Shown here: piece by piece, positions 10,070-15,850 of the stretch
Layout: each line of letters begins with the position of its first letter
Numbering within the stretch: position 1 is the stretch's first letter
IMG/VR virus record: IMGVR_UViG_3300044846_005229
Coordinates: 62,001 to 126,000 of that record
Length of the DNA: 64,000 nucleotides
Reading direction: 5' to 3' (one strand)
Notes under the pieces: generated by a model
What the model saw: only the letters and a program-made list of their open reading frames with translations
What the model was told of the DNA's origin: nothing
Database searches by the model: none
Position numbers and translations under genes: made by a program

Positions 10070-13000
10070 TCAGGACAAGATGTTGGTGATCATAGCGCCA
10101 GAACCGATAAGACCAGATGCACCGAGGCCAACCAAGTTAACCACACGTTCGATGGTGATTTCAGCACGCACGACACGGCGTTCGCGAATGTAGTACTCCA
10201 ATTTGTTATCGTAAAGGCTCTTTATCCCTTGCTTCTGCATGTTTCTATGCAGTTCAGACTATATCATCGTTTTGTAAACAAAACGTCAGGCGCTCGTGGA
10301 TTGTTCACCTGTTCTAGGCTACTTAATCTAGTCGTTGGACCTTGCTTTTATCCCTAAAAGCCTTGGCTGCTGATTGCCTTGTGTTTCAAGGAATTCACTC
10401 CTGAAACCGTCAGGTTTCCCAGCAATTCACCTAATTTCTTTTTATGTCAGACCCCAGTAGTTAAGGACGGACAGCGGGTGTTCCTGTGAGTTGATCATTT
10501 TTGTTAGCGTGAAGGTTATTTATCCTCCACTTCTTCACATTTCTGCAAAGATCAGACTATATCTTCTTCCTTGAAATTCCTTATAAACCTTTGAAGAGTT
10601 TTTGACCTAAACCCGTTTTTCTTTGTGTCCAGATTTAATAATTGACCTAAGAGTATGTCCCCAGGTTTGTTATTTTCAATCCATACTTGTCTAATCTTAT
10701 CCTTCATTCCCTCCAAGTCTTTATTAGAGTTTGGGTGAGCATAACCCCTAGGGGTATTTGAAGAATTTAATCTTGCCTTTGAGATATTCATCCGCCTCTC
10801 TGGTGTCAATGATACACCTTTTAGAGACTCGGCAATACGAAAATTATGGGATTTAGACCTGACATAGTTTTTACGGAGAAATTCGTAGATTCTCTCACCC
10901 CCGACTGAACTCATTCTGAATACTGCATACCATAGACCTTCATGGTCAAGGTACATTTTATTCAAAAGGCGGTGAAGTATAAAGTGTTGCCTCAAGGTGG
11001 GGTAGCACAGATTTTCAGGGTCCGTTTTACTTCCGCCTAGGCATTTTGGAACTATGTGGTGCTCTTCAGTTTTGTGGGACACAGGACGAGTTTTGGGGCA
11101 TTGGTAAATTATTTGCCAATACCACTTTTCCCATTTATTAAGAAAGTGACATTCAAGGAGTGGGGCGCTCGTGGATGGGTTATTATTTTCGGTATTCACC
11201 ATCTAGTCGTTGAACCTTTTGACTACAACTCTATTATAGCATAGAGTCCGAAATAGTCAACTTGGCTGCTGATTACCATAGCTTTCAAACTCTCGTTTGA
11301 AGCCGTAGGCTTCCCAGCAATTCACCCCATTGATCTGCGGATCAGGCAGATAATTTGACGTTACCGTCAAACCACGCATTCAACTCGTTTGAAAGAAACG
11401 ATGTTATTAACATACGTGTAACTGAAGGACGGAGTCGCAGCATTAGCACCACCCGCAGGCATGATCGAATCAGAAGGGCCGTTGGGGCTGTAGAACAGGA
11501 GGATGCCATTGGCGGGGAAGACAGGCTGCAAGGAGCCGTCGTTGGCCAAATAACGCCCTTCAGCTACGCGCAGGCCACGCTCAAGACCGAAGTAGCGAGC
11601 GATGACATCTGTGTCGATGCTATCGGCGGAAGTGTACTTGATACGATCAAGGATCGCTTCGTTGGTCAGCAAGAGGTCGAAAACCGAAGTTCCAAGAACA
11701 GCGGAGTTCGGACGAATGCCGATCTGGTTGGCAACAGCACGCTTCAGAGTCAGGATGTCCTCAATGGGATTAGAGGTTGCACCAGACCATGCGGCAGGGC
11801 CAGTGGCTGTGCCATAAGCGGTGTTGAAGGCGGTCCAGGTTGTAAAACCAAGACCAGTTTGTGAGCCAGGAGTCCCATTGTAGGGCTCGTATGGATTGTA
11901 GCTGCCAGTCACTGAAACAGCTTGAGCAACGGTGTACTCGTAGCTGTTCATCCATTATGTTATCGCGAGGGCTCTTTATCCCTTGCTTCTGCATGTTTCT
12001 ATGCAGTTCAGACTATATCATCGTTTTGTAAACAAAACGTCAGGCGCTCGTGTCAGCTTCATTACTGTTCTAGTAGTATGCTGTTAGTCGTTGAACGTTC
12101 CGTCAATCCCTTGACGGCTTCGCTGCTGATTACCATAGCTTTCAAACTCTCGTTTGAAGCCGTAGGCTTCCCAGCAATTCACCCAATTTTCTAAATGAGA
12201 TCAATCTCATAGGGCCAATGTGTTTAGCCTAGACATCGCATTGCGAGTCTCGACGGCGCGTAGCATTTGTTAACTCAGCGGCTCTTTATCCACTGATTCA
12301 TTACCTTGTCGTTGGTAATGTTCAGACTATATTATTGCCCCACTATGTACACGATTACTGTACTTTGTAAGACATTGGGCGCTCGTGTCAGCTTCATTAC
12401 TGTTCTAGTAGTATGCTGTTAGTCGTTGAACGTTCGTTTTCTCCCGAAAACGCTTCGCTGCTGATTGCCCACGCGGGGGTTCCAGCAATTCACCCAATTT
12501 AGAGTGGACCTACGCTGCGATCGAAATCGTTCGTAAAAAATAATCCACTTGTGCAGGACCTTCTCCTGCGTTCTCGATTCAATAATGTTATCGCAAAGGC
12601 TCTTTATCCTTTACTTCTCTCTGTTTCCAGAAAGTTCAGACTATATCTTCACCCTTATCAGGGTGCTGGGCGCTCGTGTCAGCTTCATTACTGTTCTAGT
12701 AGTATGCTGTTAGTCGTTGGACCTTGCTTTTATCCCTAAAAGCCTTGGCTGCTGATTACCATAGCATCAAACTTTCGTTTGAAGCCGTAGGCTTCCCAGC
12801 AATTCACCCAGTTTTTCTATCAGTTTTTCAACTGACGGAGGCTATCGATCTAACCTCTTCCAAGGTTGTTATCACAAAGGCTCTTTATCCTTTGCTTCTG
12901 TAAATTTACCATCTTTACAGTTCAGACTATATCACCACCCATTTTTGAATGATATCCAATCTAAGTCTTTTGAAGGTACCCAACCTTGCTCAAATTTACG

Positions 13001-15850
13001 AACCATGCGGGACACAGAAGTTGATCTTCTTACTCCCACTAAAGTTGATAGCTTTACTCCACCACATCTATGGTGAAGCCACACATTATAAATTTGATCG
13101 GCGATCATCCAAAGATTTTTGGCTTGTCTACTTGTGGATGTAGCCGTGTTTCTATATGGGGGTATATTATAACCGTGCTTAGAAACAATACTCTTTCCTA
13201 AATTAGGGAGCTTTGTGTAAGCTTTAACTAAATGAGGATGCTTAGTGTTATTCAAAAACCTAGTTATACTTCTAGCTATAAACGGGGTCATTTCCATTTT
13301 ACCTAATAAAAGATGTAGAATGTAATGTTCCCTCGGAGTTAAAGTAACTTTCCAGTGTCGATCTATATGCTCCCAGTTTTTGGGAAATAAGCATTCTGGG
13401 ATGACGTGGTGTTCTTCTACTGAGCCTTTAAGATAGCTAGACCCGTTGGTCCTTCTTTTTTCGACTTTTTGGATTATACTCCAATACCACTTCTCATATT
13501 TACTTGAATAGTGGCAAGTTAGGTGTTGGGCGCTCGTGGATGGGTTATTATTTTCGGTATTCACCATCTAGTCGTTGAACCTTTTGACTACATTCCCATT
13601 ATAGCATGGGAACCGAAATAGTCAACTTGGCTGCTGATTGGCCATTAAGTTGGAGGCTTTCCAGCAATTCACCCTATTATTCTTACCGCGCTAACTAGGC
13701 AACGGCAAGGCCCAAAGATTTAGGCAATTCCCATGCGACCACTTCCTGCTCCAGAGCATAGGGCTCGGAGTCGTAACGGCTTTGGACGTAGGGGATGTTT
13801 GTCATTTGTTAACGCAAAGGCTCTTTATCCCTTGCTTCTACATGTTTCCATGTAGGTCAGACTATATCTTTGCCTTACATTACCATGTAGGGCATTGGGC
13901 GCTCGTGGATTGTTCACCTGTTCTAGGCTACTTAATCTAGTCGTTGAACCTTGCTTTTATCCCTAAAAGCCTTGGCTGCTGATTACCATAGCTTTCAAAC
14001 TCTCGTTTGAAGCCGTAGGCTTCCCAGCAATTCACCCAATTTATTTACGGCACAAACTAATTACCGTAAGCACGACGGAAGTCGTTGATAGCAACACCAT
14101 GTTATCGTAGAGACTCTTTATTCCCTACCTCTGCATGTTTCTATGCAGTTCAGACTATATCATCGTTTTGTAAACAAAACGTCGGGCGCTCGTGGATTTT
14201 TCACCTGTTCTAGGCTACTTAATCTAGTCGTTGAACCTTGCTTTTATCCCTAAAAGCCTTGGCTGCTGATTTCCCTCGCCTTTACGTTAGGGGTTCCCAG
14301 CAATTCACCCAATTTTACAACAGCAAGCTATTTACTGTTCCTTCAATTATGTTATCGCAGGGGCTCTTTATCCCTTGCTTCTGCATGTTTCTATGCAGTT
14401 CAGACTATATCATCGTTTTGTAAACAAAACGTCAGGCGCTCGTGGAGTTTTCATCTGTTCTAGATTACTAACTCTAGTCGTTGAACCTTGCTTTTATCCC
14501 TAAAAGCCTTGGCTGCTGATTACCATAGCATCAAACTTTCGTTTGAAGCCGTAGGCTTCCCAGCAATTCACCCAATTTTTCATAACCCCTCACGGAGTTA
14601 AGCGGCATATGGAATACCGAAGCGCAGGATACGTCCTGCACGAGTTGGAGTGTCTACCACCGGTGCTATGAATAATATACAAAACTTAACGTTTTGCTCT
14701 GCATGTTTCCATGCAGTTTAGACTATATCATCATCTTTGCCTAAGCAAAGAGTCGGGCGCTCGTGGAAAGATTATTCTTGGGTCAGTCACTTTCTAGTCG
14801 TTGAACCTTCTTACTTCACTCTTATTATAGCAACAAGAGACCCGAAGTAAACTTGGCTGCTGATTGCCTCTTTTGCATAGCAAAAGTAAGGTATCCCAGC
14901 AGTTCACCCGATTATTCGACAGGGGTCACCCCCTGAAGGAACCTCATTGATTCGCAATGTTGGTAGACGGTAGCATGAAACCTTGCGCGAGGGTGGTGAG
15001 ACATTTGTTAACGTAGAGGCTCTTTATCCCCTACCTCTCTTTGTTTCCAAAGAGTTCAGACTATATCATCGTTTTGTAAACAAAACGCCCGGCGCTCGTG
15101 GATTTTTCACCTGTTCTAGGCTACTTAATCTAGTCGTTGAACGTTCCGTCAATCCCTTGACGGCTTCGCTGCTGATTACCATAGCATCAAACTTTCGTTT
15201 GAAACCGTAGGCTTCCCAGCAATTCACCGGATTTTCTTTGTTAAAAACAAAGCCACTCCTTTAAATGGGCAATATGTTATCGCAAAGGCTCTTTATCCTT
15301 CACTTCTTTACATTTCTGCAAAGGTCAGACTATATCATCATCCTTTAACTCCCATGCTGAGGAGTCAAGGAGCTGGGCGCTCGTGGAGTTTTCATCTGTT
15401 CTAGATTACTAACTCTAGTCGTTGGACCTTGCTTTTATCCCTAAAAGCCTTGGCTGCTGATTGCCTCTTTTGCATAGCAAAAGTAAGGTGTCCCAGCAGT
15501 TCACCCAGTTTTCTGCCATCATTAAAATGACAGGGACCCTAATTAATCCACACCTGCGTAGGTCTGTTGTAGCATTATGTTATCGTAAAGGCTCTTTATC
15601 CTTCACTTCTTTACATTTCTGCAAAGATCAGACTATATCATCAACTTGCAAGCAAGTTGTCGGGCGCTCGTGGATTGTTCACCTGTTCTAGGCTACTTAA
15701 TCTAGTCGTTGAACGTTCGTTTTCTCCCGAAAACGCTTCGCTGCTGATTACCATAGCATCAAACTTTCGTTTGAAACCGTAGGCTTCCCAGCAATTCACC
15801 CGATTTTCATCCCAAGGTTACCCTTGAGCGGAACCGCCATGATTCATCAT
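10070..15850 (-). CDS. Major capsid protein (lambda gpE-like), spliced from 14 exons: 15850-15842, 15572-15546, 15269-15265, 15001-14950, 14672-14616, 14343-14334, 14094-14063, 13802-13722, 12860-12853, 12579-12543, 12263-12226, 11952-11414, 10495-10464, 10198-10070
   Basis: Joined exons total 1056 nt in one open frame, 351 aa: MMNLQQTYAGVDPILTTLAQGFMLPSTNIANFIAPVVDTPTRAGRILRFGKEQFAINDFRRAYGTNIPYVQSRYDSEPYALEQEVVAWELPEEVIENAGEGPAQVDLRAVETRNAMSRLMNSYEY...PSFSYTYQLTGTPAVRPEYYIRERRVVRAEITIERVVNLVGLGASGLIGSGAMITNILS*. The DP.LT..A.G, FGKE.F, W....SNPIEDI and PSF.YTY motifs and the position after portal-protease-decoration fit a gpE-type capsid. Confidence 0.9.
10199..10463 (-). ncRNA. Group I intron 13 of MCP (265 nt)
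   Basis: P/Q/R/S core; P1 UCCU/GGGG; terminal G. Confidence 0.9.
10552..11202 (-). CDS. Intron-encoded HNH homing endonuclease with NUMOD3-like DNA-binding motif
   Basis: EEHHIVPKCLGGS...PENL...RQHFILHRLL; RIAESLKG...RMNISKA; the last codons (DIV*) are the intron S element. Confidence 0.82.
   Translation of the reverse strand: MVNTENNNPSTSAPLLECHFLNKWEKWYWQIIYQCPKTRPVSHKTEEHHIVPKCLGGSKTDPENLCYPTLRQHFILHRLLNKMYLDHEGLWYAVFRMSSVGGERIYEFLRKNYVRSKSHNFRIAESLKGVSLTPERRMNISKARLNSSNTPRGYAHPNSNKDLEGMKDKIRQVWIENNKPGDILLGQLLNLDTKKNGFRSKTLQRFIRNFKEEDIV
11233..11260 (-). promoter_or_regulatory. Sigma70-like promoter inside intron 12 P6 region
   Basis: TTGACT-16nt-TATAAT with extended -10 TG, about 30 nt upstream of the HNH ATG. 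Confidence 0.65.
11953..12225 (-). ncRNA. Group I intron 11 of MCP (273 nt)
   Basis: P/Q/R/S core; P1 GGCU/GGCC; terminal G. Confidence 0.9.
12264..12542 (-). ncRNA. Group I intron 10 of MCP (279 nt)
   Basis: P/Q/R/S core; P1 GUGGAU/GUCCAC; P10 GCGUAG/CUACGC; terminal G. Confidence 0.92.
12580..12852 (-). ncRNA. Group I intron 9 of MCP (273 nt)
   Basis: P/Q/R/S core; P1 GAGGU/GCCUC; P10 UCGAU/AUCGA; terminal G. Confidence 0.9.
12932..13567 (-). CDS. Intron-encoded HNH homing endonuclease
   Basis: EEHHVIPECL...LTPREHYILHLLL HNH-type motif; lies inside intron 8. Confidence 0.8.
   Translation of the reverse strand: MVNTENNNPSTSAQHLTCHYSSKYEKWYWSIIQKVEKRRTNGSSYLKGSVEEHHVIPECLFPKNWEHIDRHWKVTLTPREHYILHLLLGKMEMTPFIARSITRFLNNTKHPHLVKAYTKLPNLGKSIVSKHGYNIPPYRNTATSTSRQAKNLWMIADQIYNVWLHHRCGGVKLSTLVGVRRSTSVSRMVRKFEQGWVPSKDLDWISFKNGW
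13598..13625 (-). promoter_or_regulatory. Sigma70-like promoter inside intron 8 P6 region
   Basis: TTGACT-16nt-TATAAT with extended -10 TG, about 30 nt upstream of the HNH ATG. Confidence 0.65.
13803..14062 (-). ncRNA. Group I intron 7 of MCP (260 nt)
   Basis: P/Q/R/S core; P1 UUACGGU/GCCGUAA; P10 GUUUGU/ACAAAC; terminal G. Confidence 0.92.
14095..14333 (-). ncRNA. Group I intron 6 of MCP (239 nt)
   Basis: P/Q/R/S core; P1 ACAGU/GCUGU; P10 AUAGC/GCUAU; terminal G. Confidence 0.9.
14344..14615 (-). ncRNA. Group I intron 5 of MCP (272 nt)
   Basis: P/Q/R/S core; P1 CGGU/GCCG; terminal G. Confidence 0.9.
14673..14949 (-). ncRNA. Group I intron 4 of MCP (277 nt; terminal A)
   Basis: P/Q/R/S core; P1 GAAU/GUUC; P10 AUGAG pairs with the 3' exon UUCAU; last base is A. 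Confidence 0.85.
15002..15264 (-). ncRNA. Group I intron 3 of MCP (263 nt)
   Basis: P/Q/R/S core; follows the 5-nt exon CCCAT; P1 CCAU/GUGG; terminal G. Confidence 0.88.
15270..15545 (-). ncRNA. Group I intron 2 of MCP (276 nt)
   Basis: P/Q/R/S core; P1 GGAU/GUCC; terminal G. Confidence 0.9.
15573..15841 (-). ncRNA. Group I intron 1 of MCP (269 nt, no ORF)
   Basis: P GGTGAATTGCTGGGAA, Q AATCAGCAG, R GTTCAACGACTA, S ATGATATAGTC; exon ends in U with a P1 U.G pair; terminal G. Confidence 0.9.

What the first reader, a model, noticed from the sequence alone, without database searches (positions are those of the whole stretch)
14660..14949. Intron 4 ends in A rather than the near-universal omega-G
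Seen: P1 (GAAU/GUUC) fixes the 5' site after GCG AAT. Both the reading frame (IAN|FIAP) and P10 pairing (AUGAG with UUCAU) place the 3' site after ...TATATTA, whereas sister introns end ...CATATTG or ...CATAATG. The P7 G-binding pair (GACTA/TAGTC) is unchanged. Known: omega-G docks in the P7 G-site for the second step; omega-A is a rare exception, reported for the coral mitochondrial ND5-717 intron. Inference: this could be a slow, rate-limiting splice in an essential gene, a protein-assisted intron, or a single-base error.
Basis: partly seen in the sequence, partly recalled or inferred. Interest (0 to 1): 0.68.

Follow-up and report, generated by a model that had tools for sequence, protein, structure and literature searches.

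The report
Phage capsid-gene intron ending in A
One of 13 self-splicing group I introns in a lake phage's major capsid gene really does end in A instead of the near-universal G, and environmental RNA shows it is still cut out exactly, so nature tolerates a change that textbooks call essential.

Summary
The window is part of a 279-kb lake-water phage genome. Its major capsid gene (minus strand, 15850-10070) is split by 13 group I introns. Intron 4 is 14949-14673 (277 nt), begins after U14950 (a U.G wobble in P1) and ends in A14673.

- **Junction:** two lake metatranscriptome runs hold contigs joining 14950 directly to 14672, with no positional ambiguity. Two DNA runs do not hold this join.
- **Independent support:** an intron-free contig (L011) matches an intron-bearing strain (L012) at 100% over about 5 kb. 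Intron-less relatives read TNIAN|FIAPVV across the site.
- **Base call:** A at this position stands in DNA contigs from 2016 and 2024, in an unspliced RNA contig, and in every other assembly holding this intron. So it is not a sequencing error.
- **Comparison:** the 12 sister introns, and all other introns found at the same site in related phages, end in G.
- **Second change:** only the A-ending intron has A instead of G at the position matching Tetrahymena G313. This makes P9.0 fully Watson-Crick (AA/UU). Its 3' tail is also shortened.

My best reading, which is inferred, is that P9.0 and a 5-bp P10 hold the A in an unchanged G pocket, probably with slower splicing.

The parts
10070..15850 (-). 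Major capsid protein gene (Phage_cap_E type): 14 exons and 13 group I introns. The spliced ORF is 1056 nt (351 aa).
   Evidence: Pfam and PHROG hits on exon 12. Twelve Rfam RF00028 hits over the cut-off plus intron 8, which carries an ORF. Exon map, checked against RNA joints and the 350-aa intron-less homolog in L001.
14950..15001 (-). Exon 4 (52 nt), ending ...ACC AAC ATT GCG AAT. U14950 is the -1 U of the 5' splice site.
   Evidence: RNA joints 15001->15546 and 14672->14950. Homologs read LTTLAQGFMLPSTNIAN.
14673..14949 (-). Intron 4: a 277-nt group I intron with no ORF. First base C14949, last base (omega) A14673.
   Evidence: Rfam 93.7 bits. RNA contigs skip exactly 14673-14949, with 'both' = 0.
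14939..14942 (-). P1 guide GUUC, pairing with exon GAAU (14953-14950). G14942.U14950 is the wobble pair.
   Evidence: Read from the sequence; script table. The same P1 occurs in all introns at this site in related phages.
14943..14947 (-). P10 guide AUGAG, pairing with exon-5 bases UUCAU (14672-14668).
   Evidence: The pairing covaries in introns at the same site in related phages (CGAUAAG/UUUAUCG, CAAUAAG/UUUAUUG).
14795..14799 (-). P7 5' strand GACUA. G14799 is the equivalent of Tetrahymena G264 (G-binding pair) and is unchanged.
   Evidence: Alignment of the 13 introns. Numbering by comparison with the Tetrahymena core described in PMC10020454.
14721..14725 (-). P7 3' strand UAGUC. C14721 is the equivalent of C311 and is unchanged.
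14718..14719 (-). P9.0 5' strand AA (equivalents of Tetrahymena G313 and A314). A14719 is G in all 12 sisters and in every G-ending intron at this site in related phages.
   Evidence: In the fetched loci there are 211 'GTC-TGA' introns; 'GTC-TAA' occurs only in this intron.
14699..14716 (-). P9 hairpin (CUGCAUG GAAA CAUGCAG).
   Evidence: Fold of 14722-14673: -17.5 kcal/mol, z = -5.6.
14679..14697 (-). P9.1-like hairpin (GCAAAAC GUUAA GUUUUGU). It replaces the GGAUAAAGAGCC-loop hairpin of the sisters.
14673..14675 (-). 3' end U-U-A. U14675 and U14674 pair with A14718 and A14719 (P9.0). A14673 is omega.
   Evidence: The base call is supported by X1 record 7, X10 record 13 and X20 record 24, and by L004-L009, L012, L013, L041, L089 and L090.
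14616..14672 (-). Exon 5 (57 nt), TTC ATA GCA CCG ... TTC GGT, encoding FIAPVVDTPTRAGRILRFG.
   Evidence: RNA joints; homologs.

Best explanation
Intron 4 is a genuine, working group I intron whose last nucleotide has changed from G to A in one shallow lineage of a lake-water jumbo phage.

**Shown:**
- The pre-mRNA is cut after U14950 and re-joined to U14672, which removes exactly 14949-14673.
- The A is real and is kept in all strains that carry this intron.
- The G-binding pair of P7 is unchanged.

**Inferred:**
- The intron descends from a longer, G-ending intron at the same site that carried an endonuclease gene (the L045 type). It lost that gene and part of its 3' tail.
- Because A fits the G pocket poorly, the 3' splice site is held in place by its neighbours. 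These are a 5-bp P10 (AUGAG/UUCAU) stacked on P1, and a 2-bp P9.0 that a G-to-A change at 14719 (the Tetrahymena G313 position) has made fully Watson-Crick (A14719-U14674, A14718-U14675). In the sisters, P9.0 has a G.U wobble, often next to a mismatch.
- The second splicing step then proceeds accurately but probably more slowly, leaving some unspliced precursor.
For: - **Junction:** RNA runs X19 and X20 each hold a contig joining 14672 to 14950 (skips 277, 'both' = 0, shorter sides 51 and 30 nt). DNA runs X1 and X10 do not.
- **Spliced twin:** L011 lacks all introns yet is 100.0% identical to intron-bearing L012 over 3671 + 1213 nt of flanks and over all exons. Other strains differ by 4-5%.
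- **Homologs:** the intron-less homolog L001 and about 45 related phage loci read TNIAN|FIAPVV without interruption.
- **Base call:** A at omega stands in X1 (2024), X10 (2016), the unspliced X20 contig (2017), five IMG/VR contigs and one further metagenome contig. No G variant was found.
- **Strain spread:** the intron occurs in strains with different sets of introns.
- **Comparison:** all 12 sisters and 7 distinct intron types at the same site in related phages end in G and have G at the 313 position. Only this intron has A at both places.
- **P10:** it covaries among the introns at this site.
- **Published structure:** the two residues before omega pair with G313 and A314 and stack on the G-pocket (PMC10020454). 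P9.0 is thought to align the terminal G into the pocket (PMC2532722).
- **Retention hint:** in X20, intron 4 is the only intron covered as an exon-intron-exon contig (14643-14979, depth 14.8, against 118 for the spliced joint).
Against: - The link between the A at omega and the A at 14719 rests on a single lineage, so it counts as one event and could be hitch-hiking.
- P10 is not stronger than in the G-ending introns at this site (7 bp in most of them, 5 bp in L045), so P10 is inherited and is not a compensating change.
- Contig depths are poor measures of abundance, and contigs drop rare variants. Slower splicing is therefore only hinted at.
- Self-splicing without proteins was not tested.
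- The tools do not state whether L011 comes from RNA or DNA.
Confidence: 0.78

Rival explanations
1. The A is a sequencing or assembly error, and the real intron ends in G.
For: Only the general rarity of group I introns that do not end in G.
Against: The same base stands in contigs from runs dated 2016, 2017 and 2024. It also stands in 5 IMG/VR contigs and 1 further metagenome contig, which differ from the window by nearby SNPs and so are separate strains. No G variant was found with the omega position left open in the search pattern.
Confidence: 0.01
2. Splicing uses a different, G-terminated 3' site. For example, G14680 combined with a 5' site after T14957 would keep the frame and give ...TN IIL FIAP.
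For: That combination is in frame and gives a protein of the same length (my own reading).
Against: - RNA contigs join 14950 to 14672 with no ambiguity.
- Every homolog reads IAN or IAK at this place, never IIL.
- There is no U.G wobble and no P10 for the alternative. P10 after G14680 or G14666 would be 1 bp.
Confidence: 0.01
3. The joined form seen in RNA libraries is DNA, or a transcript, of an intron-free sister strain. The A-ending intron itself would then be a dead intron in a decaying gene copy.
For: RNA libraries can carry DNA, as the tool itself warns. Intron presence does vary between strains.
Against: - The joined form is absent from both DNA runs that were laid on the stretch.
- L011 equals L012 at 100% over about 5 kb, while other strains differ by 4-5%. 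About ten precise deletions with no other change would be needed.
- In X20, most introns have zero coverage while the exons are deep, which is not what contaminating DNA would give.
- The capsid gene is the only one of its kind in a complete genome with terminal repeats.
- The intron persists across strains and years.
Confidence: 0.04
4. The A is adaptive rather than merely tolerated. [quoted passage not shown] Or it could throttle capsid protein output by making one of the 13 splices rate-limiting.
For: - The hypothesis is stated for ND5-717 in PMC8146996. Reduced splicing efficiency and possible regulatory retention are discussed in PMC6545197.
- The A persists in several strains.
- There is a hint of retention in X20.
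Against: - The A is confined to one shallow clade.
- Close relatives do well with a G-ending intron, or with no intron, at the same site.
- The change came together with loss of the endonuclease gene and a tail deletion, which looks like decay.
Confidence: 0.15
5. The intron no longer self-splices and needs a phage or host protein for the second step.
Against: There is no maturase-type ORF in or next to the intron. The two intron ORFs in this gene are HNH-type homing endonucleases, in introns 8 and 12. The core scores as well as the sisters (93.7 bits, third of 13).
Confidence: 0.2

Closest known systems
Mitochondrial ND5-717 group I intron of hexacorals (sea anemones, mushroom corals)
   Same: The last nucleotide is A instead of G. 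Exons are still ligated perfectly in vivo, and splicing efficiency is reported as reduced (PMC8146996, PMC6545197).
   Different: ND5-717 is an old, obligatory, vertically inherited organelle intron with whole genes inside P8, and it is sometimes removed by back-splicing. The phage intron is small (277 nt), recently derived and mobile-type, sits in a phage structural gene, and has G-ending counterparts at the same site in sister strains. No sequence relationship between the two was tested. They look like independent origins.
Its 12 sister introns in the same gene, and the G-ending introns at the same site in related phages (L014, L019, L043, L044, L045, L057, L072)
   Same: Same core, same P1 (GAAU/GUUC at this site), same P7, and a covarying P10. 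Bases 1-201 are about 90% identical to L045.
   Different: They have a terminal G, G at the 313 position, and the GGAUAAAGAGCC-loop hairpin followed by a 10-13-nt tail. Several carry an HNH endonuclease ORF.
Classical phage group I introns (T4 td, nrdB and sunY; SPO1; Twort) and intron-rich huge phages (Jug and crAss-like phages)
   Same: Self-splicing group I introns, often with homing endonucleases, that interrupt essential phage genes. Splicing has been verified with metatranscriptomes for Jug phages (PMC12880540).
   Different: Those reports describe two to three fragments per gene. None of the papers read here reports a phage intron that does not end in G.
Tetrahymena ribozyme rules for the 3' splice site (terminal G in the P7 pocket, plus P9.0 and P10)
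   Same: The same three elements can be drawn here, with the same geometry: residues omega-1 and omega-2 pair with positions 313 and 314 (PMC10020454).
   Different: Here the G element is missing, and the other two have to carry site selection.

Membership tests
Group I intron (Rfam RF00028) | Conserved catalytic core (P3-P9) recognised by the covariance model above the gathering score | tested here: met
   93.7 bits against a 50-bit cut-off, full model 1-253.
Group I intron (Rfam RF00028) | 5' splice site after a U that forms a U.G wobble in P1 | tested here: met
   U14950.G14942 within GAAU/GUUC. The cut position is confirmed by the RNA joint.
Group I intron (Rfam RF00028) | G-C guanosine-binding pair in P7 with flanking triple-forming residues | tested here: met
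   GUUCAACGACUAG and GAUAUAGUCU are identical to the sisters. Binding itself was not assayed.
Group I intron (Rfam RF00028) | Terminal guanosine (omega-G) as the last intron nucleotide | tested here: not met
   The last base is A14673 in all assemblies, and the junction has no positional ambiguity. This is the one defining feature that fails. The element still behaves as a group I intron.
Group I intron (Rfam RF00028) | P10 pairing between the guide extension and the 3' exon | tested here: met
   5 bp, AUGAG/UUCAU. There are compensatory changes among the introns at this site in related phages.
Group I intron (Rfam RF00028) | Precise excision with exon ligation at RNA level | tested here: met
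   Spliced contigs in two RNA runs but not in two DNA runs. L011 against L012.
Group I intron (Rfam RF00028) | Protein-free self-splicing started by free guanosine | not testable with these tools
   Needs in-vitro transcription and a splicing assay.
Natural omega-A group I introns (ND5-717 type) | Terminal A with accurate exon ligation in vivo | tested here: met
   Comparison papers were read.
Natural omega-A group I introns (ND5-717 type) | Common descent with ND5-717 (same insertion site and host gene, organellar, genes inside P8) | tested here: not met
   The host gene is different (phage capsid gene), the intron has no ORF, and sister strains carry G-ending relatives at the same site. It works like ND5-717 in this one respect but is not a member of that lineage.
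Subgroup IA (typical of phages) | Extra P7.1/P7.2 helices between P7 and P3 | tested here: inconclusive
   About 35 nt with hairpin potential lie between GACUAG and CCACGAGCGCC. No subgroup-specific model was run.

The most novel reading that the evidence does not exclude
The terminal A and the neighbouring A at the 313 position form a co-adapted module. In this module the 3' splice site is recognised mainly by helices (a Watson-Crick P9.0 plus P10) rather than by guanosine docking. The phage would use the resulting slow or hydrolysis-proof splice to gate production of its major capsid protein. This would be the first such case in a bacterial virus, and a small (277 nt), tractable model for second-step chemistry without omega-G.
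Probability: 0.2. Interest if true: 0.75.

Novelty: new variant of a known kind. Interest (0 to 1): 0.62.

Why it matters
The terminal guanosine is treated as universal and essential for the second step of group I splicing, and annotation pipelines assume it.

- This is a natural intron without it, in an essential phage gene, and environmental RNA shows that it splices accurately.
- Twelve G-ending sisters sit in the same transcript, and G-ending counterparts sit at the same site in sister strains. That amounts to a ready-made natural mutant series.
- It points to one candidate compensating base (14719) that can be tested with two point mutations.
- It also shows that intron-mapping tools which require a terminal G would misplace this splice site and break the capsid reading frame.

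Tried and rejected
- **Alternative G-terminated sites (G14680, G14666):** rejected. They shift the frame, or need a 5' site with no wobble pair, and the RNA joints and homologs contradict them.
- **Change in the P7 G-binding pair:** none found.
- **P10 as the compensating element:** rejected. G-ending introns at this site have an equal or longer P10.
- **Intron 11 seemed to lack a U at -1:** resolved. The RNA-source strain (L012) has A where the window has G at 11952. Intron 11 is therefore canonical, 12225-11953 with U.G and a terminal G.
- **Genome-collection scan with exon 12:** it gave only one locus, the intron-less L001.
- **First viral scan:** it failed because I gave the wrong reading frame and was repeated correctly.
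- **Literature searches:** no report of this phage gene, and no phage intron that does not end in G, in the papers that were listed and opened. The group I intron database paper only says introns end 'most frequently' in G.
- **Splicing efficiency:** it could not be measured, because only assembled contigs, not raw reads, were available.
Full report
**Context**

The window is bases 62001-126000 of a 279,339-bp virus record with direct terminal repeats. The DNA is found in many lake-water metagenomes. On the minus strand lies a phage head module with a Mu-type portal, a protease, the capsid gene and a tail tube gene. Between 15850 and 10070, Rfam finds 12 group I introns over its cut-off. A thirteenth, intron 8, falls below the cut-off because it carries an ORF. 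Exon 12 matches Phage_cap_E and 'major head protein' families. Joining the 14 exons gives a 351-aa protein. It aligns end to end with an intron-less 350-aa homolog in a metagenome-assembled genome (L001). Exon 12 is 59% identical to the major capsid protein of Synechococcus phage S-CBWM1.

**The observation**

Intron 4 runs from C14949 to A14673 (277 nt).
- Exon 4 ends GCG AAT. GAAU pairs with intron GUUC (14942-14939), and U14950.G14942 is the wobble pair.
- AUGAG (14947-14943) pairs with the first five bases of exon 5, UUCAU.
- P7 (GACUA and UAGUC) is the same as in the sisters.
- The intron ends GTATATTA. The sisters end ...ACATAATG...ACATATTG...AACAAATG and so on.
- The first intron base differs from the first exon-5 base, and the last intron base differs from the last exon-4 base. 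The boundaries therefore cannot slide.

**Is the junction real?**

Three lines of evidence agree.
- **Homologs.** L001 reads ...TNIANFIAPVVDTPTRAGR.... Of 80 related capsid loci from viral contigs, about 45 have no intron here and read TNIAN|FIAPVV, or IAK in one locus.
- **RNA contigs.** Contigs of two lake metatranscriptome runs (X19, X20; 2017) join 14672 directly to 14950. The join skips 277 bases with 'both' = 0, and the shorter sides are 51 and 30 nt. DNA runs X1 and X10 show no exon-exon joins at all. The same RNA contigs also remove the other introns, including those around the 5-, 8- and 10-nt exons. Those short exons appear as the 'letters between' two joints: CCCAT, GAAGAGGT and (A)AGGAACAGT.
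- **A spliced twin.** Viral contig L011 (5837 nt) carries the upstream gene, all exons joined, and the downstream gene. It is 100.0% identical over 3671 + 1213 nt, and over every exon, to contig L012, which carries the introns including intron 4. Other strains differ by 4-5%. L011 is therefore best read as assembled spliced RNA of the L012 strain. The tools do not state its provenance.

**Is the A real?**
- X1 (2024) covers 14550-14881 with no difference from the window.
- X10 (2016) covers 14550-14749 and differs only at 14631 and 14649.
- The unspliced RNA contig of X20 covers 14643-14979 and differs only at 14649 and 14893.
- A search of viral contigs with the omega position left open found five more contigs from five samples, all with A. 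The same search in metagenome contigs found one more (L089) besides the L012 contig (found again as L090), again with A.
- These strains differ by exon SNPs and carry different sets of introns.
- So the A is fixed in a small clade. It is neither an error nor a one-off mutant.

**Comparison within the family**
- All 12 sisters have U.G at the 5' site and G at the 3' end. The apparent exception, intron 11, was an SNP in the strain that supplied the RNA.
- At the same insertion site, related phages carry seven other intron types, some with an HNH endonuclease ORF. All end in G.
- Their P10 covaries with the 3' exon: CGAUAAG/UUUAUCG, CAAUAAG/UUUAUUG and AUGAG/UUCAU. This confirms the register of the 3' site.
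- The closest relative (L045, 964 nt, with a 193-aa ORF) shares bases 1-201 at about 90% identity, has the same P10, and ends ...CUUAAUUG.
- Intron 4 has lost the ORF and the standard hairpin with the GGAUAAAGAGCC loop. It keeps only a short hairpin (GCAAAAC/GUUUUGU) and a 6-nt tail.
- One further difference is unique to intron 4. The second base after P7 (14719) is A. It is G in all sisters, in all G-ending introns at this site, and in 211 family copies in the fetched loci.
- Alignment with the Tetrahymena core (UUCACAGACUA.../...AUAGUCGGAC) makes 14719 the equivalent of G313, and 14718 the equivalent of A314.
- In cryo-EM structures, these two residues pair with the two residues before the terminal G. 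That short helix (P9.0, also called the P7 extension) stacks on the G pocket (PMC10020454).
- In intron 4 this helix is A-U, A-U. In the sisters it is G.U followed by A-U or a mismatch.

**Mechanism**

Shown:
- The intron is removed precisely, with A as its last base.
- The G pocket is unchanged.

Inferred:
- The A occupies the pocket weakly.
- The site is positioned by P10, which is inherited and not strengthened, and by the strengthened P9.0.
- Earlier work ties P9.0 to efficient placement of the terminal G (PMC2532722).

Hinted:
- The step is slower. In X20 most introns have no coverage at all, but intron 4 is assembled with 30 nt of both exons, at depth 14.8 against 118 for the spliced joint.
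- In X19 a contig also crosses the exon 4-intron border.
- Contig depths are crude measures, so this needs read counts.

**Rivals**
- An error, and an alternative G-terminated site, are excluded.
- An intron-free DNA strain as the source of the joins is unlikely, for the reasons given above.
- An adaptive role remains open. Blocking 3'-site hydrolysis has been proposed for ND5-717 (PMC8146996), and throttling capsid output is another possibility.
- A protein helper also remains open.

**Comparison with what is known**
- A terminal A is documented for the hexacoral mitochondrial ND5-717 intron, which also ligates its exons correctly and splices less efficiently (PMC8146996, PMC6545197).
- The phage intron shares that trait but nothing else with ND5-717. 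It has a different host gene, is small, is recently derived, and has G-ending alleles at the same site.
- I found no report of a phage or bacterial group I intron that does not end in G in the papers searched. This is an absence in the held library, not proof.
- I rate it a new variant of a known kind.

Noticed in passing
window 10070-15850 (-): A single 1056-nt capsid ORF carries 13 group I introns. Three exons are tiny: 5 nt (15265-15269, CCCAT), 8 nt (12853-12860) and 10 nt (14334-14343). RNA contigs show all introns removed, including those around these micro-exons. I found no report of such intron density in one phage gene.
   Followed up: partly
window 12932-13567 (-) and 10552-11202 (-): Introns 8 and 12 each carry an ORF (211 and 216 aa) that matches phage homing endonuclease families (phrog_655). 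The other eleven introns have no ORF.
   Followed up: partly
L009, L012, L013, L041, L005, L089, L057 versus the window: Closely related strains (exon 12 at least 98% identical) carry different sets of introns. L012 lacks introns 12 and 13 and has a different arrangement at introns 2 and 3. L013, L005 and L089 lack intron 1 and differ at introns 6-8. L057 has a G-ending, ORF-bearing intron at site 4. This is active gain and loss of introns within one phage population.
   Followed up: partly
window 10464-10495 (exon 13) versus L011/L012 and run X20: In the strain without introns 12 and 13, the 30 nt of exon 13 differ at about 8 positions, all synonymous (the peptide is still QLTGTPAVRP). This looks like a co-conversion tract, or a target site that has become immune to the intron's endonuclease.
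   Followed up: no
G000:C1:20378-21454 (-), fetched as L003:1379-2455: Three more group I introns of a different subfamily sit close together outside the window, about 50 kb upstream of the capsid gene. One has 'GUCUAC' after P7, so it also has A at the 313 position. The host gene was not identified and its 3' end was not mapped.
   Followed up: no
L019, L025, L027-L030, L033-L036 (about 91% relatives); L021: These relatives have an extra intron inside exon 4 (after ...GFMLP), which leaves a mini-exon encoding STNIAN. Contig L021 keeps that intron but lacks the site-4 intron, so it may be a partly spliced transcript.
   Followed up: no
window 11953-12084 and 15703-15801, run X20 record 23: An RNA contig built from intron sequence lies on the stretch down to exactly 11953, the terminal G of intron 11, at depth 47. 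This fits excised intron RNA accumulating. DNA run X10 shows joins between different intron copies (for example 12620->14715). These may be assembly-graph artefacts of the repeats, or recombinants.
   Followed up: no
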